From the IMG/VR virus record IMGVR_UViG_3300046516_001816, positions 124,001 through 188,000 of that record: 64,000 nt of DNA. The stretch is one strand, 5' to 3'. Shown here in pieces: positions 28,702 to 63,550 of this stretch (positions are counted from its first letter, which is position 1; each line of letters starts with the position of its first letter). Below the pieces are notes generated by a model, which was not told the origin of the DNA, ran no database searches, and saw only the letters and a program-made list of their open reading frames with translations. The translations under genes were made by a program, and so were the position numbers.

Positions 28702-28731
28702 CATGTCTCAACCACCATAAAAGGGCTCACT

Positions 28732-30348: not shown

Positions 30349-30366
30349 AAACGCATGCTTTTCGTG

Positions 30367-30393
30367 GGGAGCCTTCGGGCTCCCTTTTATTTT
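30367..30393 (+). terminator. Intrinsic terminator (cUUCGg)
   Basis: GGGAGCC-TTCG-GGCTCCC-TTTTATTTT. Confidence 0.8.
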
Positions 30394-30411
30394 GTCTTCA
30401 GGGGTTAAGAC

Positions 30412-31431: not shown

Positions 31432-31441
31432 GGAGATCAAG

Positions 31442-32542
31442 ATGGCTTTGTTGTTTTGTGACGGGTTTGATATTTACACCAAAGTCTCGGAGCTCACGGG
31501 TAAGGGCTGGCAGGGCGCGGCGGGCAGCCAGACACTCAATGCGAGTATTGCCCTGTCTGCTTCAGGCAGTCCCTACGGTGGACAATGCATTATCATCGGT
31601 CCCACCGCGAACGGGGTATCGATGTATAAACCCGGGGTGTTTACCTATGCCAATGGCTATACCTTGAACTGTGCGTATATGTACAAGCACACGGGTGGAT
31701 TCCCGAGTCAAAATGAGGGCTCGACGAACGTGGGGGGTTTGCTGCTGCTCGGCTACGATCAGCCCATCGCTGGGCAGTCCGATAGTCGCACGCTGCTCAG
31801 TGTGAATACCACAGGCAAGTTGACCTTTATGCCTTTCGGCGGCAATACGCTGAATGCGACCACGGGCAATATCAATCTTTGCGATGGCGTGTATCACTGG
31901 ATTGAAATGCAGGTGGTACTCACTACTGCGGCGACAGGTTCGGTTAAAGTGTATGTAGATGGGGTATTGGATTTAAACCTCACGAATCTTATCACCGTCA
32001 GCTCCGGCACACCGCAGGGTGAAGTAGGCTTTGGTAGCACGTCCAATAACGGAGCGTTTAGCGTCACGGATTATTACGATGATGTGGTGATGTGGGACAA
32101 TACCGGCACAACGTTCAATACCTTTCCCATTGGTCCGCAACGCATCTATACAGCCACACCCAATGCCGCTGGTGCGCTGTCGCAGTTTACCCCGAGCGCA
32201 GGGGCGAACTACGCGGTGGCTGCGCAGGCGTATTCGGGCGCGGCGTATTTGACAGCCACGGCTGCTGGGCAATCCGATCTGTATGCGACGACCGGACTCG
32301 GGGGCGCGACACCCTCGCAGATTAACGCGGTGGCGGTGAACACCTATGCCAATAATCCGGCAGCGGGATTTCGTAAGCTTCAGAATCTACTGCAATCGAA
32401 GGGCGTCACGGTCTCCGGTCCTTCTTATCAGCTCACTGCCAGCAGTGTGGGCTATCAGACGATTTTTCACACCGATAGCAGCGGCGCGGCGTGGACCACC
32501 ACCACGGTGGCGGGCATGCAGGTGGGCGTGGGAGCAGTGTAA
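31442..32542 (+). CDS. Lectin-like (LamG/ConA-like + jelly-roll) virion head protein (cassette A)
   Basis: N-terminal LFCDGFD; HWIEMQV...VKVYVDG...YYDDVVMWD; C-terminal GAAWT motif; paralog of 54380-62366. Confidence 0.7.
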   Translation: MALLFCDGFDIYTKVSELTGKGWQGAAGSQTLNASIALSASGSPYGGQCIIIGPTANGVSMYKPGVFTYANGYTLNCAYMYKHTGGFPSQNEGSTNVGGLLLLGYDQPIAGQSDSRTLLSVNTTGKLTFMPFGGNTLNATTGNINLCDGVYHWIEMQVVLTTAATGSVKVYVDGVLDLNLTNLITVSSGTPQGEVGFGSTSNNGAFSVTDYYDDVVMWDNTGTTFNTFPIGPQRIYTATPNAAGALSQFTPSAGANYAVAAQAYSGAAYLTATAAGQSDLYATTGLGGATPSQINAVAVNTYANNPAAGFRKLQNLLQSKGVTVSGPSYQLTASSVGYQTIFHTDSSGAAWTTTTVAGMQVGVGAV

Positions 32543-45579: not shown

Positions 45580-45585
45580 GCTTAC

Positions 45586-45613
45586 GGCCTCCCTGCGGGG
45601 AGGCCTTCTTTTT
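45586..45613 (+). terminator. Intrinsic terminator
   Basis: GGCCTCCC-TGCG-GGGAGGCC-TTCTTTTT. Confidence 0.75.
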
Positions 45614-45631
45614 CTGTATTAGGAGTCAATC

Positions 45632-51200: not shown

Positions 51201-54200
51201 CTGCGGCACAATCGGCAACGCAAGCAGCAGCATCGGCTACGGCCGCAGCGAGCTCAGCTACCAGTGCAGCATCGAGTGCCACCGCGGCAGCTGCGTCGGC
51301 GACAACGGCTAGCACTCAGGCAGGGAATGCCTCGACCTCGGCAACGAACGCAGCGAATTCTGCTGCTTCTATTCTGGGGCAGACGGGCACGAACCTCGCA
51401 CAAGTGCAAGCCATTCAGGCGCAGTTGAATGCAGCACTGGCGAGTTTTGGTTCCGTGTGGCTGGGTCAGCAAACCAGCGATCCGACGGTGGACTTGAACC
51501 ATCAGCCGATTGCCAATGGAGCGATGTACCAAAATACGTCGACCACGCCACCGGTGATTCGGATCTATGAAGGGGGAGTGTGGCAGGATTGGGATTTGCA
51601 AGGCGAGCAGGCGATGGCCAATGCAACCCTGGCGGCTTCCCAAGCTGCGCAGTCGGCGACCGCTTCGGCCACCAGTGCCCAGACATCGGCCACGGCTGCC
51701 AACACGGCCCTGACGGCGATGAATGCGGCACAGGCAGCCCAGACGGCTGCGCAAAGTGCAGACAGCGACGCAACGACTCAGGCCACCGCAGCAGCCGGGT
51801 CTGCCACCGCAGCAGATGGTTCGGCGCAGCAGGCAGAGTACTTCATGAACCAGGCGATTGCTTGGGCGACCTCGGATAGTGCCAACATTAACTTTTCGAA
51901 TCGGGGTTCGGCGTATTACTACGCGAGCGTAGCGTATAACTACTACGTCGCGATTCAGAACCTGAATTCGAGTGCAGGGACGAGTGCGACCAACGCGGCG
52001 AATAGTGCTAGCGCCGCAGCCGCTTCGTTGTCGTCGATTAACACGCAGTTGTCGCAGTCGGCAGCGAGTGCAACGGCCGCCGCCGCGTCGGCAGCGGATG
52101 CTGCGTCGAGTGCAGGTAACGCCAGCGCATCGGCTTCTGCTTCGGCCAATAGTGCAGCTACGTCGGCTACGCAGTCGTCTAATGCGTCCACGGCAGCGGC
52201 GAATGCCAACAACTCTGCGAATCAAGCGGCCACGAGTGCAACAGCGTCTGCACAATCAGCCACCGATGCGTCGACCTCTGCGTCTCAGGCAGCGGCTTAC
52301 CTGAACGACGTGACGAACCACACGGGTGATGCGTCTCAGTATTCGGCGCTGGCTCAGTCGTGGGCGTCGCAAGGCAGCGGCACGGTAGACGGGACCAGTT
52401 ACTCGGCCTACTACTATGCCAATCAAGCGGGCGTGTCGGCGACGAACGCAGGCAATAGTGCAGCAGGGGCCAGTAGCAGTGCGACTGCGGCAGCGGGCTC
52501 GGAAACGAACTCGGCAGCGTCAGCTGCGTTGGCACAGGCTTGGGCTAGCCAAGGTTCGGGCGTGGTCAATGGGACGAGTAGTTATTCGGCCTTCTACTAC
52601 GCTCAAGCGGCGGCGACGTCAGCGACCAGTGCAGCGAACGCTGTCACCACGGGTAGTCAGTATGTGACGTTGGCAGCTTCATGGGCTTCGCAAGCGACGG
52701 GTAATGTGGATGGTTCGCAATACAAGTCCGCCTTCCAGTACGCTACGCTGGCAGCCGCTTCGCAGCAGACGGCGAGCACCGCAGCGACGAATGCAGCCGG
52801 TAGCGCCACAGCTGCCGCTAGCAGTGCCACCGCAGCGGCCGGTTCGGCGAGTTCAGCAGCGACGTCGCTGGCCAGTCTCCAGGCAGCGTATGCGTCCTTT
52901 ACCAGCACTTGGTTGGGACCGTACAGCACGCCGCCTACCCAGACACCGACGGGTGGGGTGTTGACGATTGGTGCGCAGTACGAAGACACCAGTCAGACTC
53001 CGCCGGTAGTGATGACGTGGGATGGGTCGGTATGGAATCCGCCGAGTGCTGCGGATGCGAGTGCCTCGGCGAACGTCACGTTGGCCGCGGCTCAAGCGCA
53101 GTCTGCCGCAGGTACAGCCGCGACGTCCGCTTCGAATGCGTCGAGCTCAGAAACCAATGCCGCAGCTTCGGCGTCGGCCGCAGCTGCGTCGGCTTCGGCA
53201 GCTGATGCATCCAACACGGCGACCACTGCCAATGCCGCGTTGGCCCAAGCGTGGGCGAGCCAAACGTCTGGGAAAGTGAATGGTACGCAGTCGTATTCCG
53301 CGTACTACTACATGCTTCAGGCGCAGTCAGCTCTGAATAGTGTCCAGGCCTCGCAGACGGACGTGGATGCCAAACAAACGCAGGCAGACGCGAGTGCGTC
53401 CCTTGCCATGGCGTGGGCGTCGCAAAGCACGGGCGTGGTGAACAATACGCAGTACTATTCGGCGTATTACTACGCACAGCAGGCGCTGTCGGCTAACACC
53501 TCGGCTCAGTCAGCGCTGACGACGATTCAAGCAGCAGTGGCGCAGGCTCAAACTGCGGCCACCCAAGCGACCAATCTCGTGTCAGGCCCGAGCGGGTCGG
53601 CTAACTACTACTCGACGCAAGCGGCGAACTCCGCCACGACCGCGAGTACGGCAGCTACCAATGCACAAACCAGTGCATCGGCTGCGGCGACGTCTGCCGC
53701 GAATGCAGCTGCCGCAGCACAACAGGTGTTGACTAATTCGAATGCAGCCAGTACCAGTGCAACGAATGCGTCGAACAGTGCAACTGCTGCGGCAGGTAGT
53801 GCCACAGCTGCGCAGGGGAGCGCCACGGCAGCGAATACGTCAAAGACTAATGCAGCTACGTCAGCGACCGCTGCCGCAGGCAGTGCCAGTGCTGCTGCGG
53901 GGTCCGCCACGCAAGCGGCCAATAGTGCCACGTCCGCTACCAGTAGTGCGACCGCTGCCAGTAGTTCGGCCACGGCAGCGGCCGCCAGTGCCGCTAAGGC
54001 GCTGGTCAACGCGCGGATCTCGTGCTCCGTCACGGGTAATCCGAACGTGTTTCAAGAAGTGAAGTATCCGTTTGCGGGCGACACCTGTACGTTTGATACG
54101 AACTTTGGGCCTTCCGCAGCCATCTGTACGTTTATGGAAGGCACGAGTGCGACGGTGAATGTGTTGGCGTATAACGCGGCTCACCCGACTGGGGTGGTCG

Positions 54201-54367
54201 TGGGCACGCTCACGTTCACGCAAACGACAGGCAATAGCGGCACGGGTGTGTTTAGTTCAGTCTCGAGTACGACGACGGTGTTTAATCCGGGTGACACGAT
54301 TTCGTTGTTGCCGGTGAGCACCAATCTCGCCTCGATGGCTGTGACGTTTAAGGGTAGCTACAGTTAA
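48296..54367 (+). CDS. Very long fibre shaft (2023 aa) with 4 knob domains, 12 WAS..YSA.YYA knuckles and a C-terminal adaptor domain (cassette B)
   Basis: Ala/Ser/Thr heptads throughout; C-terminal VGTLTFTQ...VFNPGDTISL matches the end of 30412. Confidence 0.9.
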   Translation: MTGNVDHLTHLKGEVEQLVDTVDGLGVAFNLATGGDIAVYAQQALANAGQAQTASAAASQSATTATAAATQTAQDVINANAAATQAAASAGNAAQSASTAVSAQLSASSSASAASNSAIAAANSASTMAASVTAAGNSAAAAHTSETNAATSASAAQSSAAQVTALYNAWGQVFLGEFPSDPTLDNQGNALIDGAMYLNTTEVPPAIRIYTAGKWQDMDEQGVLASQAAQTSAQQAATSSSAAQTFAGTAATNAAAASTSANAAATSATTASDLAGQAATSATNASDSEIAAASSATEADAAAALAQDWASKSDGTVGGTEFFSAAHYAQEADAANTAVQSSISNAAALGGAAATSATQAASSATAAATSASQASGSATAAGVSAGNAANSAAAAQASQSAAATSETNAATSATHAATSETNAAASATSASAADTDAKAQATSATTAAQLAEDWATKTSATVDGVEYSAKYYANQAVAADTDAQAKAATAATSATTATTQATNATSSATLAQQWATSATLVASTDYSAKYYANAAGSSATAAANSASSIAATATAVAANAALAAAWASQESGTVNGTTYYSALYYALQAANADTDAQTQATNAATSATAAASSATNAATSASSLQSALASFSALFLGPHSTPPTVDNQGNPLITGAQYMDSSQSPPVLNEWTGSAWVAVSNDASGNAQLAATQAQAAATSASGSASAASTSESNASTSATNAANSATAAASSASASAGSATAAQTAASAAQAADTDATTQATNAGASATSAAGSASAAGTSAGQATDAAALAQAWASQASGNVNGTAFASALQYAQQASSSATSASTAVTQSQANATLAQSWASQTSGKVNSSNYYSAYYYATQAATSATAAGTSATTASTAATSATASQTAAATSATNAAGSATTAQTAATTATNQAAAASASASAAAASDTDATTQASNAAASATTASNAATTASAAATTATTQATAAAQSATQAAASATAAASSATSAASSATAAAASATTASTQAGNASTSATNAANSAASILGQTGTNLAQVQAIQAQLNAALASFGSVWLGQQTSDPTVDLNHQPIANGAMYQNTSTTPPVIRIYEGGVWQDWDLQGEQAMANATLAASQAAQSATASATSAQTSATAANTALTAMNAAQAAQTAAQSADSDATTQATAAAGSATAADGSAQQAEYFMNQAIAWATSDSANINFSNRGSAYYYASVAYNYYVAIQNLNSSAGTSATNAANSASAAAASLSSINTQLSQSAASATAAAASAADAASSAGNASASASASANSAATSATQSSNASTAAANANNSANQAATSATASAQSATDASTSASQAAAYLNDVTNHTGDASQYSALAQSWASQGSGTVDGTSYSAYYYANQAGVSATNAGNSAAGASSSATAAAGSETNSAASAALAQAWASQGSGVVNGTSSYSAFYYAQAAATSATSAANAVTTGSQYVTLAASWASQATGNVDGSQYKSAFQYATLAAASQQTASTAATNAAGSATAAASSATAAAGSASSAATSLASLQAAYASFTSTWLGPYSTPPTQTPTGGVLTIGAQYEDTSQTPPVVMTWDGSVWNPPSAADASASANVTLAAAQAQSAAGTAATSASNASSSETNAAASASAAAASASAADASNTATTANAALAQAWASQTSGKVNGTQSYSAYYYMLQAQSALNSVQASQTDVDAKQTQADASASLAMAWASQSTGVVNNTQYYSAYYYAQQALSANTSAQSALTTIQAAVAQAQTAATQATNLVSGPSGSANYYSTQAANSATTASTAATNAQTSASAAATSAANAAAAAQQVLTNSNAASTSATNASNSATAAAGSATAAQGSATAANTSKTNAATSATAAAGSASAAAGSATQAANSATSATSSATAASSSATAAAASAAKALVNARISCSVTGNPNVFQEVKYPFAGDTCTFDTNFGPSAAICTFMEGTSATVNVLAYNAAHPTGVVVGTLTFTQTTGNSGTGVFSSVSSTTTVFNPGDTISLLPVSTNLASMAVTFKGSYS

Positions 54368-54379: not shown

Positions 54380-55501
54380 ATGAGCGCCACTCCGCAGTTT
54401 ATCGTCGGTGCTGAAGGTCTGGATCTCTATGCAGCCGGCGTCCTGGGGAATAAGTTCCCTTGGTTCCAGACCAATGCGACCTACCAAGGTCAAGTAGTAG
54501 CAGGCGCGGGCGTGTTCGGCGGCAATGGCCTCTCGTTCGCTGTAGCGGCAGCCAATCAGTCGGGCATGGAGTACCAGTTCCCCTCCACCATGCAGGTGAT
54601 GAAAAATCAGGTGGCAGCAGGGGGCAAAGGTGCATTTGGAGTGTGTGGGTGGGTTAAAATCGGCACCCCGGTGGCAACAGGGACCGATATTCTGTTAGCA
54701 CTGGGGTCGTCGGCTAATCCGGCGGCAGCCTTGCCTTTGCTGGGGCTGAACAACGCCACCGCGAGTGGGTTGAGTTTGGTGCTGCCGTCGACCACGGCCA
54801 ATCTGGTGTCGGCACCGCACTTGCTTGCCATTAACCCGAATAGCGCGTTGTGGGTCGGGGTGTATTTTTCGTACACGCCGAACGCGAATGGGACACTGAC
54901 CGGCACACTGTGTCTGTCGGGCTCAGGCATCTACCAGGATGTGCCGATTACCTTTAGTACCGATATCTTTACCGCGGGGCAGTTGTGTAACCGTCTGCGC
55001 TTTTACTCCGGGGTGGTGGCACCCTGGACGCTGGATGACATGATCATTCATGCGGTCTCGAATGCAGACACGCTCTGGCCCGCGCCGACGACGCTGAACC
55101 CGGAAGTGATTCCGCAGTATCTGCCGCGTCAAATCTCGCTGGCCACTGCCACGGGTCCGGGCAGTAAGGCGGACATGACGCCCTCGGGCAGCGAACCAAA
55201 CTGGCAATCGGCGACCGATCAAACGGGCGCGAATTCCGTGATTGCCACCGCCATTAACCAGACGGACACGTATAAGTGGAGTACGACGGCCACGGATATC
55301 AAAGCCGTGGTCTACCGAGGTCAGAGTGAGAAGTACAGTCAGTTGAGCGCTGTGCAGTTGGTGGGCGCGACCCAGAGCACGATGGGCTTGACCGAAGCGG
55401 GGCCGAATGATTTCATTGGCATTTCCGAAAACGACGGCGCGGCGCAGTGGACGGCGACCTCAGTGGCAGCGGCTGAGTTCGGTCAGACCTCGCATAACTA
55501 A
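54380..55501 (+). CDS. Lectin-like virion head protein, short type (paralog of 31442)
   Basis: SD AAGGA; GAEGLDLY N-terminus; WTLDDMII; C-terminal GAAQWTATSV. Confidence 0.7.
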   Translation: MSATPQFIVGAEGLDLYAAGVLGNKFPWFQTNATYQGQVVAGAGVFGGNGLSFAVAAANQSGMEYQFPSTMQVMKNQVAAGGKGAFGVCGWVKIGTPVATGTDILLALGSSANPAAALPLLGLNNATASGLSLVLPSTTANLVSAPHLLAINPNSALWVGVYFSYTPNANGTLTGTLCLSGSGIYQDVPITFSTDIFTAGQLCNRLRFYSGVVAPWTLDDMIIHAVSNADTLWPAPTTLNPEVIPQYLPRQISLATATGPGSKADMTPSGSEPNWQSATDQTGANSVIATAINQTDTYKWSTTATDIKAVVYRGQSEKYSQLSAVQLVGATQSTMGLTEAGPNDFIGISENDGAAQWTATSVAAAEFGQTSHN

Positions 55502-55509: not shown

Positions 55510-57795
55510 ATGACCGCTTTATTGATGGAAGGGTTTGAGAGCGTCATTGACACGCCGGACCTGACGAACCGCGGATGGAAGATGTCCAGCATGGCGTCGT
55601 CGAATGGCGCCAATACCATGACCTTGCCTTCGCGCACGGGCATGCCGGGTAGAGGATTGTTTTTGCGGGGCCCGTACAACTCTAATACGACCAACCTGCC
55701 GTTTGCCAATGCGGTGGATTTCGGGATGCTCGATACCGGTGCGTCCATTTATAGTCTCTGGCAGTCAGGCGGATTTTGTTTGGGCGTGAATGCCGTGTTT
55801 AACAAGGCGAACATGGTCCAGATCGCGAACTACATGACGCGTCAGATCGTGTACGATGGAGCGCAGTACTACTGGGCCCTGGGTCAGGACAATAGCAATG
55901 TGTGGCGGGTGTACTACTCCACGGACTTGCAGAACTGGACACAGACAACCATCACGCCCGGCAGCGCTGCCTTGGGTTCATCGATTACGGTGATCGGCAG
56001 CGGACCGAGCGCCACCGTGATTGTCGGAGGGTTTCTCATCAGCACCACGGCTGCGTTTTACTACTCGACCAATATGGGACTGGCCTGGACGGCGAGTAAC
56101 GCCACCGGGATCTCGGGCTCCAAGACAGTGATCGCCACGGGCAACGTCAACACTCCCATTATGTTCGGGGCCCAGCCCAGTAGTGGCGCGAACGGCGTTT
56201 TCTATCTGAGCAGTGTGTCAGGCGCGCCGGTGCAGGTGGCAGGCTTGGCGCTCACGGCCTCGAGCACGTATAACTCGGGTAACTCCAAGTTGGTGAATGG
56301 GATAGCGTGCTTTATCGCCTCCTCGGGTACAACGTCCCCGGCCGCCTTGACGACTAATGCGTCTATCGTGGCATGCTGTCCGGTGTCCAAAGACATGACG
56401 ATAGCGGCCAACTATACGTTGACGCCTTCGCTGGCGCATCAGTTGGCCGATATCACGTTCCTCAATAACACGTGGATCGCTGTAGGGCATGGCGGGATTT
56501 ATACGTCCCCCAATAGTGGTACGGTGGGTGCGCCGGCGGGCCCGACTGCTGCGTGGTCGACGGCACTGGCGGTGACACAAAACGGCGGCGTGTATTCGAT
56601 CGATACGAACGGTACGGTGGCCGTGGCCGTGGGTAATGATAACGTGAGCTCGGTAATTCCGGCCATCTATACGTCGACCGATGGCGTGAGTTGGGCGAAA
56701 CAGAATCGTCTTACCTTCACCACCGCCAACAACGTCGCGAACACGCAGCCGTTTACCAACGTCTTCTGGGACGGTCATCAGTTTGTGCTGACGGGTGGTG
56801 TGAGTAATAGCGTGGTGGCGACTTCACCGGATGGTTTTCAGTGGACGCCGCAGTACGTGCCCGACTACACGGAGTCGTCGGGGGGGTCCGTGGCCTCGAT
56901 GCTGGGTGTGTATTCCGGTGTGATGAACGCCGGCGCGTGGGTCGGTGCAAGTCAGGCCGCGGGCGGTTTTGCTCCGTGGACGACGGGGGCGGCCGCCCAA
57001 TGTGGGGTGGGACTGTTAGCCGGTCCAGTCAGTAATGGCGCCCGCAACGTGAGTGCCTGGTTGGTACCTGGCGGGACGACGACGAGCGCGATCGTAGCCA
57101 TTTCCTCGATGAGTGCCGCGGTACCGACCAACCCGTTGTCGCACTACTACGAGCTGATTGCCACGGCCACCGCGAGTGTGAACACCTTTACGTTCCAGCT
57201 CGCCATTGATGGCGTCGTGCAACCGGCACTCAGTCCGCCCGTTCAGTTTGCGGCCACGGGCGACACCACCGGTGCGTCGCATCTGATTTTCAACCTTCCG
57301 CGCTCAGGCAACTGGGTGATGGTGGATGACCTTTATTTGACGAACTTCTCAGGCTCAAATAACGTGGGTCAACTGGGTGTCACCAGTGTGTTGCCGTGGG
57401 TGCCCTCCAGTGATGTACAGGCGCAGTATAACCGAACGGCGGGATCGTCTAACGCCTCGCAAGTCGTGGGTCCGCTCTCCAATGCTCAGACGAGCGTTAA
57501 TGCTCAAGCGGTGGGGGCGAAGGATATCTACGGCATGACCACTAGCGTGCCAGTCGGCTATCGCGTGCGCGCCATGCAGGCAGAAGCCTACTTTTCGAAG
57601 TTTGGTGCCACGGGGGCAGCCGCAACGGTCGGCATTGTCAGTAACGGCGCGGAAAGCGATTCGGCGCAAGCGAACGCGGCGACTAGCACGCCCGTGTATG
57701 CCTCGGTCCTGTGCGACACCGATCCGAAGACGGGTGCTGCCTGGACGGTAGCGGCTGCACAGGCGGCGGAGATTGCGATCGTCAAAGCAACTTAA
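55510..57795 (+). CDS. Lectin-like virion head protein with inserted beta-propeller (long type 1)
   Basis: MEGFE N-terminus; YSTDL..WT, STNMG..W, STDG..W, SPDG..W (BNR/Asp-box-like) repeats; DPKTGAAWT C-terminus. Confidence 0.8.
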   Translation: MTALLMEGFESVIDTPDLTNRGWKMSSMASSNGANTMTLPSRTGMPGRGLFLRGPYNSNTTNLPFANAVDFGMLDTGASIYSLWQSGGFCLGVNAVFNKANMVQIANYMTRQIVYDGAQYYWALGQDNSNVWRVYYSTDLQNWTQTTITPGSAALGSSITVIGSGPSATVIVGGFLISTTAAFYYSTNMGLAWTASNATGISGSKTVIATGNVNTPIMFGAQPSSGANGVFYLSSVSGAPVQVAGLALTASSTYNSGNSKLVNGIACFIASSGTTSPAALTTNASIVACCPVSKDMTIAANYTLTPSLAHQLADITFLNNTWIAVGHGGIYTSPNSGTVGAPAGPTAAWSTALAVTQNGGVYSIDTNGTVAVAVGNDNVSSVIPAIYTSTDGVSWAKQNRLTFTTANNVANTQPFTNVFWDGHQFVLTGGVSNSVVATSPDGFQWTPQYVPDYTESSGGSVASMLGVYSGVMNAGAWVGASQAAGGFAPWTTGAAAQCGVGLLAGPVSNGARNVSAWLVPGGTTTSAIVAISSMSAAVPTNPLSHYYELIATATASVNTFTFQLAIDGVVQPALSPPVQFAATGDTTGASHLIFNLPRSGNWVMVDDLYLTNFSGSNNVGQLGVTSVLPWVPSSDVQAQYNRTAGSSNASQVVGPLSNAQTSVNAQAVGAKDIYGMTTSVPVGYRVRAMQAEAYFSKFGATGAAATVGIVSNGAESDSAQANAATSTPVYASVLCDTDPKTGAAWTVAAAQAAEIAIVKAT

Positions 57796-57809
57796 GTGAG
57801 TAAAAGATC

Positions 57810-60071
57810 ATGACCTGTGTGTTAACAGAAGGATTTGAGTCCGTCCTCGATGATACGGATGTGGTGCGTCGCGGCTGGGTGCGCCCGAGCGCTGTCACCT
57901 TGAGTGGAGCTGGGACACTGGGGATGCCTGCACGGACGGGACAACCAGGTCGTGGTCTACTCTTGCGCGGACCGTATTATAGTGCCGGTGGCTTACCTAA
58001 TGCCACTAGCGCGATAGCGGACTTCGGGATGCTCAATACGGGCAAGAGTATCTACAGCCTCTGGCAGGCCGGTGGGTTTGTAGCGGGTTTTAGTGCAGCA
58101 TTCAATAGCTATCCGCACACGACTCAGCTGCAAGTAGCCGCACCCGATACCCAGCAGATCGTCTATGACGGCGCCCAGTATTACTGGGCCATTGGGCAGA
58201 TCTATTCGAGTTCGACCAACGTCGTGATGTATTCGACCGATCTGGTGAACTGGACCCCGTGTGGGGCCCAGCCGACCCTGCTTCAGAACGCAGTGATCCA
58301 AGTGATCGGTAGCGGACCCAACGCCACGATCATTCTCGGTAATAAGAGCGGCGTGTCGCCGATGGTGCCTTCCTACAGCACCAATATGGGATCGAGTTGG
58401 AGCACGATGGCTATCGGTGCCTCGGATAATATCAAGAAGATTCTGCCGGCTGCCGGCCCGTCTTCCGCGCCGTATATTGCCGTTGGCTACTATCCGGGTA
58501 ACGGATTTCGATTGTGGAGTTATGCGTCGCTTTCGGCTACCCCGACTTTGATCACAGGAGCGAACGTGACGGGGACCGTGACGTATGGTACCGCATGGGC
58601 ACGGGTGAGTAATGGCTTCTATGTGGTCTGCGGGATGTCGATGGCAGCGTCCGGCACTGCGCCAGCGGCGGGGTCCTCGTTCGTGTGGTATTGCCCGACC
58701 AGTGTGGACCCAACGGTCGGCAGTAACTGGGTAGCGCTGACAAGCGCCAGCACGAACTATTTCAATGACGGTATCTACTTCAACAATCGTTTTGTGATGG
58801 TGGGGTATAACGGCATCTATTGGAATGGGGCGGCGAGCAATAACACCTGGATCAATGCGCTCACAACAGGTACTGCTTCGGTGTACTCGATTGCCTCCAA
58901 TGGTTCCATGCTGGTCGCAGTCGGCCAGGATCCGGTGAACACCACGTTGCCGGCGATTTGGACCTCCCCAGACGGGATGACCTGGACCAAGCAGAACAAG
59001 CTGATTCTGTCCAACGCCGGAGGCAATGGCAACAATACGATGTTTTCGAATATCTATTGGGATGGGGCGCGCTGGGTGTTGACCGGCGGCGTGAATTGCA
59101 ATGTGATCGCCACCTCGACGGACGCCGTTACCTGGACGCCGCTCTATTACCCGGATTATCCGGAAACGGGCGTTACGGCGGGCTCCATGCTGGGTGTGTT
59201 TTCAGGAACCCTCAACGCCGCTAACAATATATTTACGCCGTGGTCAGCGACCACAGGAGTGGTGGGGCTCGGGGTAAACGCGACCCCGGTCTCCAGTCTG
59301 AATCGGGCGCTCAATGGTGCGACCGTGACCGGGGCAAACACGATTAGCAATATTGCGCCGGCGACGACGGTCTTTACGACCAATGTGGTCGGCCCGCAAC
59401 CCGTGGGTCAGCTCACGCACTACTACGAGCTCATTGCGACGGCGACGGCTTCTCAGAATACTTTCACCGTTCAGTGGGCGCTTGATGGGGTGATCCAACC
59501 GGGCGTGATTGGGACGATTCTCTTTGCCGGCGCAGCCGACACCGGCTCAGCGCAGCTCTGTCTGAATCTGCCGCGCAGCGGGGCGTTTGTCATGATTGAT
59601 GACATTTATGTCAACACCATGAATGGCTCGAGCAATGTCGGGCAGCTCGGACCGGTCAGTGTGTTCCCTTGGACGCCAACGTCGGACACGCAGGCGCAGA
59701 TGACCGCGTCGCTTGCGGGCTCCCACGCTGCACAAATTGCAGGTCCGCTGTCCACCAACACGGGTTCGCTCTCGACGTATGTGCAAGGCACGAAAGACAT
59801 CTATGCCACGAGAGAGTCCATCCCAGCGGGCTTTACGATTAAGGCTGTTTCAGCAGAGGCGATCTTCACCAAGAACGGCACGATTGGGGGCGCGGGTAAC
59901 GTCGGGATCACCAGCAACGGGCACGAAGTCGATTCGACCGCGGTGTCCGCGCCGGTGGCCAATACGTATTACTTCGCCTCGGTGCTCTTGGAGACGGATC
60001 CCAACACGGGCCTGGCGTGGACCAAGACAGCGCTGGATCTCGCGGGTATTACCGTGAGCAAAACGAATTAA
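57810..60071 (+). CDS. Lectin-like virion head protein with inserted beta-propeller (long type 2)
   Basis: TEGFE; same motif order as 55510; DPNTGLAWT. Confidence 0.8.
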   Translation: MTCVLTEGFESVLDDTDVVRRGWVRPSAVTLSGAGTLGMPARTGQPGRGLLLRGPYYSAGGLPNATSAIADFGMLNTGKSIYSLWQAGGFVAGFSAAFNSYPHTTQLQVAAPDTQQIVYDGAQYYWAIGQIYSSSTNVVMYSTDLVNWTPCGAQPTLLQNAVIQVIGSGPNATIILGNKSGVSPMVPSYSTNMGSSWSTMAIGASDNIKKILPAAGPSSAPYIAVGYYPGNGFRLWSYASLSATPTLITGANVTGTVTYGTAWARVSNGFYVVCGMSMAASGTAPAAGSSFVWYCPTSVDPTVGSNWVALTSASTNYFNDGIYFNNRFVMVGYNGIYWNGAASNNTWINALTTGTASVYSIASNGSMLVAVGQDPVNTTLPAIWTSPDGMTWTKQNKLILSNAGGNGNNTMFSNIYWDGARWVLTGGVNCNVIATSTDAVTWTPLYYPDYPETGVTAGSMLGVFSGTLNAANNIFTPWSATTGVVGLGVNATPVSSLNRALNGATVTGANTISNIAPATTVFTTNVVGPQPVGQLTHYYELIATATASQNTFTVQWALDGVIQPGVIGTILFAGAADTGSAQLCLNLPRSGAFVMIDDIYVNTMNGSSNVGQLGPVSVFPWTPTSDTQAQMTASLAGSHAAQIAGPLSTNTGSLSTYVQGTKDIYATRESIPAGFTIKAVSAEAIFTKNGTIGGAGNVGITSNGHEVDSTAVSAPVANTYYFASVLLETDPNTGLAWTKTALDLAGITVSKTN

Positions 60072-60080
60072 GGAAGCGTC

Positions 60081-62366
60081 ATGACTTTACAGTACATGGA
60101 AGGGTTTGAGACGGTCGTCGATTATTCCGACTGGACCAAGCGAGGCTGGTTCAATAGTGTTAACCCCAGCATTGCGGGTAACTCCGTGGCGGGGCTGCCT
60201 TCGCGTACCGGCACCGTAGGGCGGGGTCTGATGCTCAAGGGTCCGTATGCGGGCAACGCCAGCTTGCCGCTCGCGGTGGCGAGTACGTCTGACTTTGGCA
60301 TGTATCCGCTGGGTAAGAGTATCAATAGCCTCTGGCAAGCCGGGGGTTTTGTGCTCGGGGTCAATGCGACCTTTAACAAAGTCAACAAACAGGAAATCGC
60401 GGCGTGGTGTCCGAATCAGATCTGTTACGACGGCGCCCAGTATTATTGGGCGGTTTGTGTCAATAACGCGGGCGCGGTTCAGGTCTGTTACTCGACGGAC
60501 CTGATGACCTGGACGCCTACCGTTACACAGCCAGCGGGACTGGGGCTCCTTTCGACGATTGCCGTCTCGGGCAGCGGCGCCACCGCCACCGTGGTGGTGG
60601 GTCACTACCAGTCGCAGCAGAATTCTTTTCCGGTCTTTACCACCAATATGGGATTGAACTGGAGCAACGGTACCACGCTGGCCGGCGCCACGATTCTGCG
60701 CATTTTCCCGTCAGGCAATCCGACCACTCCGTGGGCTTACGTCGCTCAGGTTGGCACCGCGGTAGAATGCGGGGTGTTCTCGGGCGGGTTAACAGGTACC
60801 GCTAACACGTTGTCGACGACAACCTTTAGCAATTACGGCCAGGCAGGCTATCCGTATGCGATTGGTAACGGTAAGCTCGTCAATGGCGTGGTGTGTATGC
60901 TGGGGACCCTGACGGGCAATGCCGTGCCTAGCACGCTGGGTTCAACGGGTCAATATTTCTGGACGTGTAACAACACGCTCGATATGACCGTGGCGGCTAA
61001 CTGGAAACAGAGCGCCAATACGATATTAGGATACTTTCAGGACATTACGTTCTTTAACAACAGGTGGTATGCCGTGGCCGGCGGGGGTATTCTGAGCGCG
61101 CCTCAAACTGGCACGGCGCAAGTACCTCAAGGGCCGACGGCTGCCTGGGCGGCGGTTGTCAACTTTGGCAATAACGGGTATTGGCTTAACTCCATCGACA
61201 CGAACGGTTCGATCATGGTGGCGGTGGGGTCCGATAACGTTAATGTCAACTACGGCGCGATCTGGACTTCCACAGACGGCGTGAGCTGGACCAAGGCAAA
61301 TCGTTTCCCGGGTGGGGTGGGCGGTATTCAGGCTGGCGGCGTGGGCGGGTTCACGAATGTTTTCTGGGATGGTCGACAGTTTGTATTAACCGGGGGTCCG
61401 AATCAGAATCTGATCGCCGTGTCGCCGGACGGTCTGAACTGGAATCCGCTTTACTATCCGGATTACGCCGAAAGTGTCGTCCCTACTTGTGCGTCCATCT
61501 TTGGACTGTATTCCGGTACGGTCAATGGTTCGGGCTTGTATGTACCCTGGTCCGTCGCCAGTGGTACGTTTTGCGCCGTCGGCATAAACGCATCGGCGCA
61601 ATCCAACGGCACGCGCACGGTCACCAACTACCTGGTGACGGCCTATAGTACACCAACTGCCACGGCGACAGCGTCGGCCGCGGTCTCTACAGCGCAGCTC
61701 TCGCACTACTACGAGCTGATTGCCACCGCAGGCGCCACGGCGAATTCGTTTACGTTCCAGCTGGCGATTGACGGCGTGATTGTCCCCAACACGAGTGCAG
61801 CGTGGTCATTCGCTCCGTCGGCCGACACCGGTACGCAGATGGCGTATTTGAACTTGCCACGCAATGGTAACTTCGTGATGCTGGACGACATTTACCTCAC
61901 GGACTTTGTGGCGGATCCGTTGGGTAACACTGGTCAACTGGGGATTGTCAATATCATCGGCGGGCAACCGAGCTCGGATGCAGCCGTGCAGTTCACTCAG
62001 CAGGGCACGGCGGCGTCTCATGCTGCCCAGCTGGCGGGGGCGTTGTCCAATTCGGAAGGCGGGGCGTACACCTACACGGTGGGCGCGAAAGATACCTACA
62101 ACGCCACGATACCGATCCCGGCGAACTACAAGATCCAAGCAGTCCAGGTCGAGGCGTATTTCACGCGCTACGGCAACTCGGGTGCCAATGCATCGGTGGG
62201 GATTCTGAGCGGTACGCACGAAGTGGATTCGCCGGCTGTATCGGCGATGAGTGCGACGGTCCCGTCGTATGCGAGCTTGATGCAAAACGTGGATCCGAAT
62301 ACCGGCGCCCAGTGGACGATTGCGGGCCTTCAGGCAGCGAAGCTGACGATCAATAAGCTGACCTAA
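60081..62366 (+). CDS. Lectin-like virion head protein with inserted beta-propeller (long type 3)
   Basis: MEGFE; same motif order; DPNTGAQWT. Confidence 0.8.
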   Translation: MTLQYMEGFETVVDYSDWTKRGWFNSVNPSIAGNSVAGLPSRTGTVGRGLMLKGPYAGNASLPLAVASTSDFGMYPLGKSINSLWQAGGFVLGVNATFNKVNKQEIAAWCPNQICYDGAQYYWAVCVNNAGAVQVCYSTDLMTWTPTVTQPAGLGLLSTIAVSGSGATATVVVGHYQSQQNSFPVFTTNMGLNWSNGTTLAGATILRIFPSGNPTTPWAYVAQVGTAVECGVFSGGLTGTANTLSTTTFSNYGQAGYPYAIGNGKLVNGVVCMLGTLTGNAVPSTLGSTGQYFWTCNNTLDMTVAANWKQSANTILGYFQDITFFNNRWYAVAGGGILSAPQTGTAQVPQGPTAAWAAVVNFGNNGYWLNSIDTNGSIMVAVGSDNVNVNYGAIWTSTDGVSWTKANRFPGGVGGIQAGGVGGFTNVFWDGRQFVLTGGPNQNLIAVSPDGLNWNPLYYPDYAESVVPTCASIFGLYSGTVNGSGLYVPWSVASGTFCAVGINASAQSNGTRTVTNYLVTAYSTPTATATASAAVSTAQLSHYYELIATAGATANSFTFQLAIDGVIVPNTSAAWSFAPSADTGTQMAYLNLPRNGNFVMLDDIYLTDFVADPLGNTGQLGIVNIIGGQPSSDAAVQFTQQGTAASHAAQLAGALSNSEGGAYTYTVGAKDTYNATIPIPANYKIQAVQVEAYFTRYGNSGANASVGILSGTHEVDSPAVSAMSATVPSYASLMQNVDPNTGAQWTIAGLQAAKLTINKLT

Positions 62367-62376: not shown

Positions 62377-62991
62377 ATGACCACAGGTGTATACGCCCAA
62401 GGGGTCAATGGCCAGTATCTTGCCCAGCAGATCACCTCCGTGCGCATTGGCGGGGTGAATGGACAAGTGCTGGCGCAGTTTTCCCCGAAGTCGGTAAAGA
62501 CGCGTGCGACTAACGGTCAGATGTTGGTGTCAGCCCCCAGTGCCATTAATGTCCAGGCAGTCAATGGTCAGGTACTGGCGTATCGGTCAGGCGTGAAAGC
62601 ATCAGGCGCCGGCATACAGGTGATGACCAAAGCCAAAGGTGCGGTGATTTCACAAGGCGTCGGCGTCCAGGTACTGCTGAAGCAGCCGGGGGGTGTGGAA
62701 GTCATTCGTGCTAACATGCAGGTGTTGGTGCGTTCACGCTCTGCAATGCAAGCCCAGGCTGTGGGCGGGCAGATGCTGGTGAGTAAGCTGCTGGATGTGC
62801 GTACGACCCAAGTCATGATGGAAGTGATTGGGGAAGTGCCGCCATACTTACCGGTCACTGGGGTGAACCTGGAAGTCATCGGGGCAGGGTTCCCGGCGGC
62901 TCCCCTGAAGCAAGTGACGCTCGAAGTGATTGGCGCCACGACCCTTCCGTACCAGAGCCCTGGACAGACGGTCACGTGGTGGAGCAGCTAA
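62377..62991 (+). CDS. Protein of 11 tandem ~17-aa beta-strand repeats (cassette B scaffold candidate)
   Basis: SD AAGGAGG; repeats such as GVNGQYLA, GVNGQVLA, AVNGQVLA, GVGVQVLL, QVMMEVIG, GVNLEVIG, QVTLEVIG. Confidence 0.8.
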   Translation: MTTGVYAQGVNGQYLAQQITSVRIGGVNGQVLAQFSPKSVKTRATNGQMLVSAPSAINVQAVNGQVLAYRSGVKASGAGIQVMTKAKGAVISQGVGVQVLLKQPGGVEVIRANMQVLVRSRSAMQAQAVGGQMLVSKLLDVRTTQVMMEVIGEVPPYLPVTGVNLEVIGAGFPAAPLKQVTLEVIGATTLPYQSPGQTVTWWSS

Positions 62992-63099: not shown

Positions 63100-63131
63100 C
63101 CCACGCCCTTTGCCGGGTGTGGGCCTTTTTT
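63100..63131 (+). terminator. Intrinsic terminator
   Basis: CCCACGCCC / GGGTGTGGG stem, then CCTTTTTT. Confidence 0.65.
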
Positions 63132-63160
63132 CCCTCAATTGCCTTTTCAGGACTATTTTG

Positions 63161-63550
63161 ATGAGTTATCATCCCGGCGCGATTTTGATGGACCTGCATC
63201 CCGCGATTCGTAAACTGCAAGACCGGGTGCTCATTGAAATGGAAGTTGCGTGTTCAGACGACGGTGCGGCGTATTTTACCGACCAGTTAATCGAAGACGT
63301 AGTGTCCTGTATCGATCAAGAAAATATGGCGATGAGTTGTTTGTATGACTACGCCGATCGCCAGAAGCAATCCCTGCTCGATTGTGGTCGAGACGCAGAA
63401 GCCCAGCGCATGGCCAGCGAGATTGTGGACTTTGGTCGTGACCTGATTAATAACTTCAAGGAGCATCGCGTCTACGAGAACGGACAGCTGAACTACGTCT
63501 TCTCGGGACGCTGTGCGAGTAAGACCTTGATCTTATCGCGGTACTGTTAA
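63161..63550 (+). CDS. Hypothetical protein (jumbo-phage type)
   Basis: AGGA before ATG 63161; acidic helical protein. Confidence 0.65.
   Translation: MSYHPGAILMDLHPAIRKLQDRVLIEMEVACSDDGAAYFTDQLIEDVVSCIDQENMAMSCLYDYADRQKQSLLDCGRDAEAQRMASEIVDFGRDLINNFKEHRVYENGQLNYVFSGRCASKTLILSRYC

What the first reader, a model, noticed from the sequence alone, without database searches (positions are those of the whole stretch)
55510..62366. Three tandem head paralogs carry a ~390-aa propeller inserted into the short-head framework
Seen: 55510, 57810 and 60081 (753-761 aa) share ordered motifs (RTGxxGRGLxLxGPY, DFGM, SLWQxGGF, YDGAQYYWA, YSTDLxxWT, TNMGxxW, WDGxxxVLTGG, YxPDYxE, HYYELIATA, NLPRxGxxVMxDDxY) but differ widely between them. 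The short heads (31442, 54380; 366-373 aa) keep the N-terminal [DE]G[FL][DE] motif, the LamG-like 'DD' strand and the C-terminal GxxWT motif but lack the S/T-x-D-G-x-x-W repeat block. Inference: a BNR/Asp-box-like propeller was inserted, then triplicated and diversified to recognise different surface glycans. This would be host-range expansion by parallel display rather than switching.
Basis: partly seen in the sequence, partly recalled or inferred. Interest (0 to 1): 0.6.

Follow-up and report, generated by a model that had tools for sequence, protein, structure and literature searches.

The report
Tandem lectin–propeller tail-fibre heads
A jumbo phage carries three diverged side-by-side genes for a lectin-like protein with a seven-bladed propeller spliced into one of its loops, lying just after a giant tail-fibre gene; they are most likely interchangeable host-binding tips, but nobody has yet tested what they bind.

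Summary
ORFs 55510, 57810 and 60081 (761, 753 and 761 aa) are full-length paralogs at about 46% identity. With residues 100-451 removed, their family aligns end to end with the 366-aa short-head family (hhalign 99.9%, E 5e-31). AlphaFold (pLDDT 88.9) makes residues 100-451 a seven-bladed beta-propeller, nested in a loop of a ConA-like lectin jelly roll.

The propeller has Asp-box-like hairpins in 4 of 7 blades and is nearest to DUF6242/Ycf48-type propellers. It passes no Pfam threshold and is not a sialidase.

Divergence is polarised. B-C and D-A loops (one face) keep 5-9% identity among the paralogs, against 38-63% for A-B and C-D loops.

The "triplication" is not private to this phage. An AU test rejects monophyly of the trio (p 0.012), and relatives carry 1, 2, 3 or 6 copies.

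The array always follows a fibre ending in a conserved ~117-aa domain (8 of 8 phages). It is co-oriented, tightly packed, ends at a terminator, and shows no switching repeats.

Virion attachment, ligand binding and glycan specificity remain inference. This is a new variant of a known kind (phage adhesin modules), of moderate interest.

The parts
48296..54367 (+). Giant tail-fibre protein (2023 aa) with an Ala/Ser/Thr-rich shaft of 21-nt periodicity. It has no Peptidase_S74 chaperone, unlike the three fibre genes upstream.
   Evidence: PHROG tail-fibre families, e.g. phrog_38058 at E 1.5e-56. No S74 in Pfam. Repeat families spaced in multiples of 21 nt.
54005..54364 (+). Conserved C-terminal ~117-aa domain of the fibre (residues 1904-2023). 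It is the proposed docking platform for the heads (inference).
   Evidence: The profile of this domain hits the last ~117 residues of the fibre gene directly upstream of the head array in 8 of 8 phages. Those fibres range from 409 to 2023 aa.
54380..55501 (+). Short head of the 54380 type (373 aa): a divergent ConA-like jelly roll plus C-terminal beta-sandwich, without a propeller.
   Evidence: hhalign to the 31442-type family gives 99.1%, E 9e-19. Orthologues sit at the same position in L006, L007, L008, L009, BcepSaruman gp279 and BCSR5 QRE00314.
55510..57795 (+). Long head 1 (761 aa).
55510..55806 (+). Long head 1, N-terminal part of the split jelly roll (aa 1-99).
   Evidence: hhalign of long 1-61 to short 1-60 gives 95%, E 4e-8. 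The global alignment agrees.
55807..56862 (+). Long head 1, nested seven-bladed beta-propeller (aa 100-451). Asp-box-like hairpins sit in blades 1, 2, 6 and 7.
   Evidence: VIA-align Z 21-23, rmsd 3.2-3.4 A over 270-290 residues, to seven-bladed propellers. DSSP strands.
56863..57375 (+). Long head 1, C-terminal part of the split jelly roll (aa 452-622). Residues 452-543 are variable; 544-622 are conserved and include the DD strand.
57376..57792 (+). Long head 1, C-terminal beta-sandwich domain (aa 623-761), shared with the short heads.
   Evidence: hhalign of long 536-758 to short 142-364 gives 98.9%, E 1e-17. The equivalent short-head domain has TM 0.92 to clusters of viral proteins.
57810..60071 (+). 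Long head 2 (753 aa). Propeller at 58119-59153.
60081..62366 (+). Long head 3 (761 aa). Propeller at 60384-61460.
62377..62991 (+). 204-aa ORF that closes the array. It is conserved after the heads in L006, L007 and L008. No family match; possibly an assembly factor (guess).
63100..63133 (+). Intrinsic-terminator-like hairpin (9 pairs, 7 of them G-C) followed by a T-run. It lies in the only long intergenic gap (118 nt) after the array.
31442..32542 (+). Short head of the 31442 type (366 aa, phrog_2448). This is the framework nearest to the long heads: ConA-like jelly roll at 1-236 and beta-sandwich at 237-366.
   Evidence: phrog_2448 E 2e-26. AF2 pLDDT 92.6. VIA Z 17.2 to TtX122A and 16.1 to PL20 lyase.

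Best explanation
The three genes encode separately made receptor-binding 'heads' (adhesin subunits) of the giant tail fibre encoded just upstream.

Each head has three modules:
- a ConA-like lectin jelly roll;
- a seven-bladed DUF6242/Ycf48-like (Asp-box-type) beta-propeller spliced into one hairpin loop of the jelly roll, at about residue 88-92 of the short form;
- a C-terminal beta-sandwich.

Shown here: the domain architecture; a single shared insertion site across the whole family; strict synteny with a fibre ending in a conserved ~117-aa terminal domain; co-orientation and tight packing up to a terminator; and concentration of sequence divergence on the propeller face formed by the B-C and D-A loops, plus blades 3-4 and jelly-roll segment 452-543.

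Inferred: the heads dock on the fibre's terminal domain. The variable propeller face, perhaps with the adjacent variable jelly-roll loops, binds host surface structures, probably carbohydrates. Several diverged copies expressed from one operon give the virion or the virion population several specificities.

The array evolves by gene birth and death (1 to 6 copies in relatives). It moves together with the fibre tip between unrelated jumbo phages that share a host.
For: Architecture:
- AF2 model of 55510: pLDDT 88.9, pTM 0.90.
- Residues 100-451 match seven-bladed propellers at Z 21-23.
- The short-head model (pLDDT 92.6) is a ConA-like lectin/glucanase fold at residues 1-236. It gives Z 17.2 to TtX122A, and also Z 13.1 to the mycobacteriophage Douge baseplate, 11.9 to the TM4 gp23 receptor-binding domain and 11.2 to the phage J-1 Dit CBM2.
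- The long family minus its propeller aligns end to end with the short family at 99.9%, E 5e-31.
- All full-length relatives checked, from a 1.84-billion-protein search and from the loci, share the same architecture and junction.

Tail context:
- Flanking genes are PHROG tail-fibre families.
- The fibre terminal domain lies directly upstream of the heads in 8 of 8 phages.
- Intergenic gaps are 8-14 nt, with a terminator after the array.

Specificity signature:
- Identity among the three paralogs is 0.63 for A-B loops and 0.38 for C-D loops, against 0.09 for B-C and 0.05 for D-A loops (Fisher p 4e-10).
- In ten independent close orthologue pairs, B-C/D-A loops changed 21.0% of sites against 13.3% for A-B/C-D (p 2e-5).
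- Apart from D377 in the blade-6 B-C loop, no invariant residue lies in the variable-face loops.

Host-linked transfer:
- phiRSL1 ORF183 and ORF184 are 79% and 72% identical to RsoM2USA 419 and 421.
- Those two phages show no genome-wide similarity (PMC8504454).

Precedent:
- Propeller domains occur in phage receptor-binding or peripheral tail proteins: phi11 gp45, PRD1 P2 and phiKZ gp131C (PMC6115969).
- One distant propeller relative carries an Mtd_N tail-fibre N-terminus.
Against: - There is no direct evidence that the proteins are in virions or bind anything. No proteomic or functional paper on this family was found.
- The docking model rests on synteny only. The complex prediction could not be run.
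- The face assignment comes from DSSP strand order, not from coordinates, and the strand assignment in blades 3-4 is uncertain.
- Conserved A-B and C-D loops could reflect only the structural Asp-box role or packing against the jelly roll.
- The recent-substitution enrichment on the variable face is modest (odds ratio 1.7).
- The best structural matches of the jelly roll include polysaccharide lyases, so an enzymatic role is not excluded.
Confidence: 0.6

Rival explanations
1. The heads are enzymes: polysaccharide lyases or hydrolases that degrade capsule, EPS or LPS. The jelly roll or the propeller would be the catalytic domain, rather than a pure binding module.
For: - The top fold matches of the short-head jelly roll include PL20 glucuronan lyase (Z 16.1), PL14, PL7 and PL36 alginate lyases, and GH16 and GH131 enzymes.
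- Whole-model Foldseek hits are led by GH43 xylosidases, which pair a propeller with a jelly roll.
- One distant short-family member carries PF14099.
- There is a weak GH43 Pfam hit at residues 106-147 (E 0.004, below threshold).
Against: - No catalytic family reaches a Pfam threshold.
- GH43 propellers have five blades and this one has seven.
- Invariant propeller residues are nearly all blade-core and Asp-box positions. The loops of the putative active face are the least conserved part.
- The same fold list is equally full of non-catalytic lectins and CBMs.
Confidence: 0.12
2. The copies are alternative heads, not simultaneous ones. They compete for the same docking site, so each fibre or virion carries one or a random subset. 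The population hedges its bets rather than each particle displaying all heads in parallel.
For: - The paralogs keep the same conserved N-terminal jelly-roll part (identity 0.46) and the 544-622 segment (0.48), which could form one common docking surface.
- Only one fibre terminal domain of this type exists in the genome.
- Fibre length does not track copy number. Fibres of 409 aa and 1116 aa each have 2 heads, and the 2023-aa fibre has 3.
Against: Nothing here speaks directly against it. If the fibre is trimeric, as tail fibres usually are (own knowledge, not tested), its tip could offer three sites. The 54380-type short head may add further sites. Stoichiometry is unknown.
Confidence: 0.25
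3. The proteins are not specificity determinants. They would be structural or assembly accessories of the fibre (chaperone-like caps, stabilisers) or virion decorations with generic adhesion.
For: - The position just downstream of a fibre gene is where tail-fibre assembly proteins are usually encoded (own knowledge).
- This fibre lacks the S74 self-chaperone that the neighbouring fibres have.
Against: - At about 750 aa, with three globular binding-type folds, the proteins are unlike the small known assembly chaperones. The 204-aa ORF at 62377 is a better chaperone candidate.
- Tandem multiplication to as many as 6 copies and divergence polarised to one face are not expected of an assembly factor.
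- Cassette exchange between unrelated phages of one host points to host interaction.
Confidence: 0.1
4. The evolutionary direction is the reverse. The short heads arose from a long ancestor by loss of the propeller, rather than the propeller being inserted.
For: No rooted framework tree was made. A clean domain deletion from a hairpin loop is structurally as easy as an insertion.
Against: - The short framework is widespread in unrelated phages: siphoviruses, podoviruses and jumbo phages of many hosts.
- The long form is confined to one set of jumbo phages, all with an identical junction.
- Two deeply diverged short lineages exist, so deletion would have had to occur early or more than once.
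Confidence: 0.1

Closest known systems
phrog_30887: phiRSL1 ORF183/ORF184, RsoM2USA 419/421, BcepSaruman gp278, BCSR5 QRE00315. All are annotated as hypothetical proteins.
   Same: Same family over the full length (E 3e-56 to 3e-82 to the PHROG). Same four-part architecture and same position after a fibre with the conserved terminal domain.
   Different: The cultured phages have one or two copies and the window has three. Identity to them is only 26-33%. None has a described function.
phrog_2448 short heads (window 31442, BcepSaruman gp270, BCSR5 QRE00318/319), plus structurally similar ~320-370-aa proteins of many siphoviruses and podoviruses (e.g. Achromobacter phage AchV4 'virion structural protein').
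   Same: Same jelly roll plus C-terminal sandwich framework. hhalign 99.9% once the propeller is removed. BFVD matches with TM 0.5-0.6 by target.
   Different: They have no propeller. They sit in other tail-gene contexts. Their function is also unknown.
Beta-propeller domains of phage receptor-binding or peripheral tail proteins: phiKZ gp131C (seven blades), phi11 gp45 (five blades, putative GlcNAc pocket), PRD1 P2 (six blades).
   Same: A propeller used as a peripheral or host-recognition module of a phage. phiKZ is also a jumbo phage, and its propeller also has seven blades (PMC6115969).
   Different: No sequence relationship was shown here, and these structures were not among the top 50 fold matches. 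Their propellers are not nested inside a lectin domain and are not in tandem gene arrays.
DUF6242 (PF19755/PF25852), Ycf48/PSII_BNR, Sortilin-Vps10 and BNR Asp-box propellers.
   Same: - Asp-box-type hairpin between the third and fourth strands of a blade.
- Seven blades, as in the Atlas structure matches to PSII_BNR/DUF6242_C clusters (TM 0.65-0.75).
- The propeller profile hits thousands of multi-blade proteins, and those sampled pass the DUF6242 threshold.
   Different: - The window proteins reach no Pfam threshold themselves. Best results are DUF6242 E 0.0024 and BNR E 0.061.
- Three of the four motifs are one residue shorter than the canonical S-x-D-x-G-x-T-W.
- Blades 3-5 have no clear motif.
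ConA-like lectin-fold heads and CBMs of siphophage baseplates: TM4 gp23 receptor-binding domain (9n6a), mycobacteriophage Douge baseplate protein (8zdo), Lactobacillus phage J-1 Dit CBM2 (5ly8).
   Same: Same jelly-roll fold, used on phage tails for carbohydrate or host recognition. Z 11.2-13.1 over about 180 residues.
   Different: Fold-level similarity only (8-9% identity). Those domains are fused to baseplate proteins, not separately encoded after a fibre, and carry no inserted propeller.
Separately encoded fibre-tip adhesins (T2/S16-type gp38) and branched multi-receptor-binding-protein systems (CBA120, G7C, Rak2-like phages). This comparison rests on own knowledge.
   Same: The logic is the same. 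Specificity modules are encoded as separate genes next to the fibre gene, and several receptor-binding proteins are carried together.
   Different: The folds are unrelated. Attachment is demonstrated in those systems and only inferred here.
GH43 beta-xylosidases (e.g. 5jox, 2exh).
   Same: Top Foldseek hits of the whole model. They pair a propeller with a jelly-roll sandwich.
   Different: Five blades. The domains are in series, not nested. They are catalytic. TM is only 0.18-0.28.

Membership tests
phrog_30887 (long heads) | Full-length match to the family profile | tested here: met
   E 3.7e-76, 3.1e-56 and 2.5e-82, covering profile positions 18-770 of 771.
phrog_2448 (short heads) | Full-length match to the family profile | tested here: met
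   31442 gives E 2.1e-26 over profile 1-331 of 335. The long heads match only profile positions ~91-329 with their residues ~513-755. 54380 has no direct PHROG hit, but hhalign to the family gives 99.1%.
BNR/Asp-box repeat (PF02012) and sialidase-type propellers | Asp-box motif S-x-D-x-G-x-T-W in the hairpin between strands 3 and 4 of the blades | tested here: inconclusive
   Motif-like hairpins sit at the right topological place in blades 1, 2, 6 and 7. Blade 2 has canonical spacing (with N for D). The other three are one residue shorter. Blades 3-5 are degenerate.
BNR/Asp-box repeat (PF02012) and sialidase-type propellers | Score above the Pfam gathering threshold | tested here: not met
   BNR matched 7 of 18 family propellers, with a best E of only 0.061. 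BNR_2 matched 1 of 18 at E 0.052. The full-length scan found nothing.
BNR/Asp-box repeat (PF02012) and sialidase-type propellers | Six-bladed sialidase fold with a conserved catalytic Arg triad and nucleophile pair | tested here: not met
   Fold matches are seven-bladed. No invariant Arg lies within residues 100-451 in 51 sequences.
DUF6242 (PF19755/PF25852) and Ycf48-like propellers | Score above the Pfam gathering threshold (29 bits) | tested here: inconclusive
   Not met directly: 5 of 18 members match, best E 0.0024. Met transitively: the propeller profile hits multi-blade proteins at E 1e-38 to 1e-94, and 7 of the 10 scanned pass PF19755 with 33-63 bits. The best PDB sequence hit is a DUF6242 protein, 9his_H, at E 0.027.
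DUF6242 (PF19755/PF25852) and Ycf48-like propellers | Seven-bladed propeller fold | tested here: met
   Z 21-23 to seven-bladed propellers. Atlas structure matches to PSII_BNR/DUF6242_C clusters at TM 0.65-0.75.
ConA-like lectin/glucanase (LamG-like) jelly roll | Fold match covering the whole domain | tested here: met
   Short head residues 1-236 give Z 17.2 (rmsd 3.0, 205 aligned) to 8q28, and 12-14 to legume, ERGIC-53 and sialidase lectin domains. The long heads are linked by profile homology.
ConA-like lectin/glucanase (LamG-like) jelly roll | Pfam Laminin_G or lectin family score; defined sugar or Ca2+ site | tested here: not met
   No Pfam family for any of the five proteins at E up to 1. 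A ligand site cannot be assessed without coordinates or experiments.
Phage receptor-binding protein or tail-fibre adhesin (functional class) | Encoded in the tail-fibre module and linked to a fibre gene | tested here: met
   Flanking PHROG tail-fibre genes. The conserved fibre terminal domain lies upstream in 8 of 8 phages.
Phage receptor-binding protein or tail-fibre adhesin (functional class) | Present in virions and binds a host receptor | not testable with these tools
   No proteomic or binding data were found in the literature searches.
Polysaccharide lyase (PL20, PL14, PL7) or glycoside hydrolase | Family-level sequence match and conserved catalytic residues | tested here: inconclusive
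   Fold similarity only. No Pfam match for the window proteins. Catalytic residues were not mapped because no coordinates were available.
Switching systems (DGR variable repeats, invertible fibre segments) | Template/variable repeat pair, or inverted repeats flanking oppositely oriented genes | tested here: not met
   The longest inter-paralog DNA repeats are 26-101 nt at 62-88% identity. There is one weak 27-nt inverted pair, and it lies inside the fibre gene. All genes are on the + strand.

The most novel reading that the evidence does not exclude
The long heads are a so far undescribed plug-in adhesin system of jumbo phages. Separately encoded lectin-propeller subunits would dock on a conserved ~117-aa terminal domain of coiled-coil fibres of any length (409-2023 aa). 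They would multiply in tandem (1 to 6 copies) to add specificities. They would travel together with the fibre tip as a cassette between unrelated jumbo phages that share a host. Host range would then be tuned by gene copy number and head repertoire, rather than by mutating or switching a single tip.
Probability: 0.3. Interest if true: 0.65.

Novelty: new variant of a known kind. Interest (0 to 1): 0.45.

Why it matters
If the heads are specificity modules, this cassette is a compact, portable determinant of host range in jumbo phages of Burkholderia and Ralstonia, which are under study for biocontrol and therapy. Predicting the host range of such phages would then mean reading the head repertoire.

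The family is also a clean natural example of domain nesting. A whole propeller sits in a lectin hairpin, apparently acquired once and then kept in all relatives examined.

It gives the large DUF6242-type propeller class a concrete, testable context on phage tails. The tandem arrays (1, 2, 3 and 6 copies) offer a natural series for studying gene birth and death in receptor-binding genes.

Tried and rejected
- Megablast of the region against 50,697 phage records found no match.
- Pairwise BLASTP of long against short heads gave only marginal N-terminal hits (E 0.005). Profile methods were needed.
- Pfam on the full-length proteins found nothing above threshold.
- A word-index search with the propeller alone returned one weak hit, P0092. 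It gives no close stand-alone donor for the insertion. The exhaustive profile search found only distant multi-blade relatives.
No support and no verdict either way.
- The 'atlas' fold library was not installed.
The face mapping therefore used DSSP strand order instead of 3-D positions.
- Searches of the held (open-access and preprint) library for phiRSL1, RsoM2USA or Sarumanvirus virion proteomics covering these genes found nothing usable.
- DGR or invertase-type switching was rejected, because there are no suitable repeats.
- A recent private triplication was rejected by the AU test and the trees.
- A literal 'capsid head' reading was rejected on gene context.

Full report
**Source and context.** The window is bases 124001-188000 of a 284,983-bp IMG/VR virus record rated 100% complete, with 57.8% G+C. 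It is a jumbo phage. The proteins of the finding have cultured relatives only in Ralstonia phages phiRSL1 and RsoM2USA and in Burkholderia phages BCSR5, BcepSaruman and BcepSauron.

The surrounding genes form a tail-fibre module:
- a 2197-aa fibre (38986) and two shorter fibres (45632, 47053), which all end in a Peptidase_S74 self-chaperone;
- a 2023-aa fibre (48296) that lacks the S74 domain.

**Observation.** The five ORFs exist as described. Their mutual E-values are 1e-164 to 1e-175. The whole genome holds exactly three propeller-bearing copies and two short heads.

**Is a propeller nested in the short-head framework?** Yes. Four lines of evidence agree.
- PHROG profiles place the long proteins in phrog_30887. 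They place only their last ~240 residues in phrog_2448, the family that 31442 matches end to end.
- Profile-profile comparison aligns long residues 536-758 with short 142-364 (98.9%, E 1e-17). It aligns long 1-61 with short 1-60 (95%, E 4e-8).
- When the columns for residues 100-451 are removed, the long family aligns end to end with the short family. The result is 99.9%, E 5e-31 in global mode and 99.5%, E 7e-23 in local mode. A reversed-sequence control gives 16 columns at 34%.
- The junction falls in a hairpin loop of the short form, near residues 88-92, where the model's pLDDT dips.

54380 is a more distant branch. It links to the 31442-type family at 99.1% (E 9e-19), but not directly to the long family.

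**Structures.**
- AlphaFold2 with a 51-sequence alignment gives pLDDT 88.9 and pTM 0.90 for 55510.
- Residues 100-451 match seven-bladed propellers (Utp4, virginiamycin B lyase, Cdc20, G-beta, YVTN). Scores are Z 21-23, rmsd 3.2-3.4 A, over 270-290 residues. All are tied, so no specific family emerges from fold alone.
- The short head (pLDDT 92.6) has a ConA-like lectin/glucanase jelly roll at residues 1-236. It gives Z 17.2 to TtX122A, 16.1 to a PL20 lyase and 12-14 to many lectins. Among phage parts it gives 13.1 to a Douge baseplate protein, 11.9 to the TM4 gp23 receptor-binding domain and 11.2 to the J-1 Dit CBM2.
- The C-terminal ~135 residues form a beta-sandwich. It recurs in many viral proteins (TM 0.92) and resembles CBM_4_9-type modules at TM ~0.6.

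**What kind of propeller?** From the DSSP strands I assign blades at 113-145, 157-195, 217-253, 254-304, 312-354, 360-398 and 415-449. The hairpin between the third and fourth strands carries Asp-box-like motifs in blades 1, 2, 6 and 7.

At sequence level every match is below threshold:
- Pfam BNR in 7 of 18 family propellers (best E 0.061), DUF6242 in 5 of 18 (best 0.0024) and Sortilin-Vps10 in 3 of 18;
- the best PDB sequence hit is a DUF6242 protein at E 0.027, followed by sortilins and sialidases at E 0.3-0.9.

The ESM Atlas places the domain among DUF6242_C, PSII_BNR and Sortilin clusters, many of them viral.

An exhaustive profile search of 1.84 billion representatives found 12,337 hits at E up to 0.001. 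Two kinds stand out among the top 150.
- Full-length long heads, all with the same N-frame, propeller, jelly-roll and C-domain order. Three are shortened at one or both ends.
- Large multi-blade proteins that match only the blade 6-7 region repeatedly. Seven of the ten scanned pass the DUF6242 threshold, and one begins with an Mtd_N tail-fibre domain.

So 'Asp-box-like' is fair, and the nearest named class is DUF6242/Ycf48-like. Membership is not established, and sialidase membership is excluded: the fold has seven blades, and no Arg is invariant across the 51 aligned family members within residues 100-451.

**Divergence map.** Identity among the three paralogs, by region:

| Region | Identity |
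|---|---|
| N-terminal jelly-roll part (1-99) | 0.46 |
| Propeller (100-451) | 0.25 |
| Jelly-roll segment 452-543 | 0.18 |
| Jelly-roll segment 544-622 | 0.48 |
| C-terminal domain (623-761) | 0.29 |

Within the propeller:

| Element | Identity |
|---|---|
| A-B loops | 0.63 |
| C-D loops | 0.38 |
| Strands | 0.27 |
| B-C loops | 0.09 |
| D-A loops | 0.05 |

- The difference between B-C/D-A and A-B/C-D loops gives Fisher p 4e-10.
- Blades 3-4 share almost nothing.
- In an antiparallel four-strand blade, the B-C and D-A loops necessarily lie at one end and the A-B and C-D loops at the other. This is general propeller geometry, not measured on coordinates. The variable positions therefore cluster on one face.
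- Ten independent close orthologue pairs (77-97% identity) show the same bias more weakly. Sites changed are 21.0% against 13.3% (p 2e-5). Segment 452-543 is also high at 21.5%.

**Duplication history.**
- In a 55-sequence tree, each window copy has closer relatives on other contigs: 55510 with P0006, 57810 with P0026 (support 99), and 60081 inside a 14-row clade (support 97).
- In an 18-sequence careful tree, 55510 pairs with the first copy of locus L006 (92/96). Locus L007 shows recent internal pairs at 100/100.
- The AU test rejects a clade of the three window copies (delta lnL 24.4, p 0.012).
- Copy numbers:

| Copies | Genomes |
|---|---|
| 1 | BcepSaruman, BCSR5, L009 |
| 2 | phiRSL1, RsoM2USA, L006, L008 |
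| 3 | the window |
| 6 | L007 |

- Co-occurrence of several search hits on single large contigs suggests that some other contigs also carry multiple copies.
- The array therefore evolves by birth and death. The insertion itself looks like a single old event, because the junction is the same in every relative.

**Conserved cassette.** The gene directly upstream of the heads always ends in the same ~117-aa domain. This holds in all 8 phages where the upstream sequence is held, although the fibre proteins range from 409 to 2023 aa. L007 is cut off before its fibre gene.
- A 54380-type short head lies between the fibre and the long heads in six of these, and at the start of L007. It is absent in phiRSL1 and RsoM2USA.
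- The window genes are separated by 8-14 nt, each preceded by a purine-rich stretch.
- The only long gap, after the 204-aa ORF at 62377, holds a strong terminator-like hairpin at 63100.
- No long DNA repeats or inverted repeats exist that could drive DGR or invertase switching.
- phiRSL1 ORF183 and ORF184 are 79% and 72% identical to RsoM2USA 419 and 421. Their upstream fibres share about 51-55% identity over large parts.
- The RsoM2USA paper reports no genome-wide similarity between those two phages and places RsoM2USA with XacN1 (PMC8504454). This is the pattern expected of a host-linked module exchanged as a cassette.

**Mechanism.**
- Shown: the architecture, the synteny, the operon-like layout, the polarised divergence and the cassette exchange.
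- Inferred: the heads dock on the fibre's terminal domain. The variable propeller face, perhaps with the variable jelly-roll loops, binds host surface carbohydrate. Several heads broaden recognition.
- Precedents for propellers in phage recognition or peripheral tail proteins are phi11 gp45, PRD1 P2 and phiKZ gp131C (PMC6115969). Propeller lectins also occur on contractile-injection-system fibres (PMC12923769).
- No paper characterising this family was found.

**Rivals.**
- An enzymatic role. Lyase and hydrolase folds are among the best jelly-roll matches, and GH43 leads the whole-model Foldseek list. However, no catalytic family is matched, and the putative active face is the least conserved part.
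- Alternative rather than simultaneous loading of heads. This cannot be separated from parallel display with these tools.
- A purely structural or assembly role. Size, copy-number variation and polarised divergence make it unlikely.
- Loss of the propeller in the short forms. This is less parsimonious given how widespread the short framework is.

**Verdict.** The 'triplication in this phage' and the functional claims are respectively corrected and left open. The family is uncharacterised (phrog_30887, 'unknown function'), but it belongs to a known kind of system, modular phage adhesins. I rate it a new variant of a known kind, with interest 0.45.

Noticed in passing
window 38986-48207: Three co-oriented fibre genes (2197, 473 and 384 aa) each end in a Peptidase_S74 intramolecular chaperone. 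The N-terminal ~65-75 residues of the two short ones match the N-termini of the same short fibre proteins in locus L006. This suggests interchangeable distal fibres with a common adaptor.
   Followed up: partly
window 28699-32542: A second head locus: a 549-aa fibre-like protein, then a 339-aa protein, then the 31442 short head. None of them has the ~117-aa terminal domain that precedes the long-head array, so this head probably attaches differently.
   Followed up: partly
window 48296-54004: The 2023-aa fibre shaft is built of Ala/Ser/Thr-rich units with spacings in multiples of 21 nt (heptad-like). It is punctuated by 8 copies of a 57-nt element (family D6).
   Followed up: no
L007:719-14641 (IMGVR_UViG_3300043754_000129): Six long heads in tandem after a 54380-type short head. 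Two pairs (copies 1+2 and 3+4) are recent duplicates with 100/100 support. This is the largest array seen.
   Followed up: partly
L001:7971-17196 and L002:5416-14199: phiRSL1 and RsoM2USA are reported as unrelated genome-wide. Yet they share the fibre tip plus both long heads at 72-79% amino-acid identity, and also a small ORF (ORF185 and 420, 53% identity).
   Followed up: partly
window 63565-63999: The partial ORF at the window end has a weak QueC-like N-terminus (Pfam E 0.0054, below threshold). This may hint at 7-deazaguanine metabolism.
   Followed up: no
window 63110-63550: The listed TTG start of this 146-aa ORF overlaps the terminator hairpin at 63100-63123, and a promoter-like site lies at 63144-63172. 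The real start is probably further downstream. Homologues of 127-128 aa follow the array in L006 and L007.
   Followed up: no
protein P0097 (1837 aa, metagenomic): A distant propeller relative that starts with an Mtd_N (major tropism determinant) domain and has 13 blade-type matches. It is a different way of putting DUF6242-type propellers on a phage fibre.
   Followed up: no
window 32135-32539 (aa 232-366 of 31442): The C-terminal sandwich has a near-identical predicted fold (TM 0.91) in a bacterial cluster whose members carry an N_methyl pilin-type signal (Zixiibacteriota). The domain may therefore also serve on pilus-like adhesins.
   Followed up: no
proteins P0058 and P0077: Short-head homologues are recorded in bacterial assemblies: Caballeronia arationis at 61% identity and Burkholderia pseudomallei at 36%. 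They are presumably prophage-borne and point to a Burkholderiales host for the window phage.
   Followed up: no
window 60081-60098: The public gene call for the third long head (P0020, 756 aa) appears to start at the second Met.
   Followed up: partly
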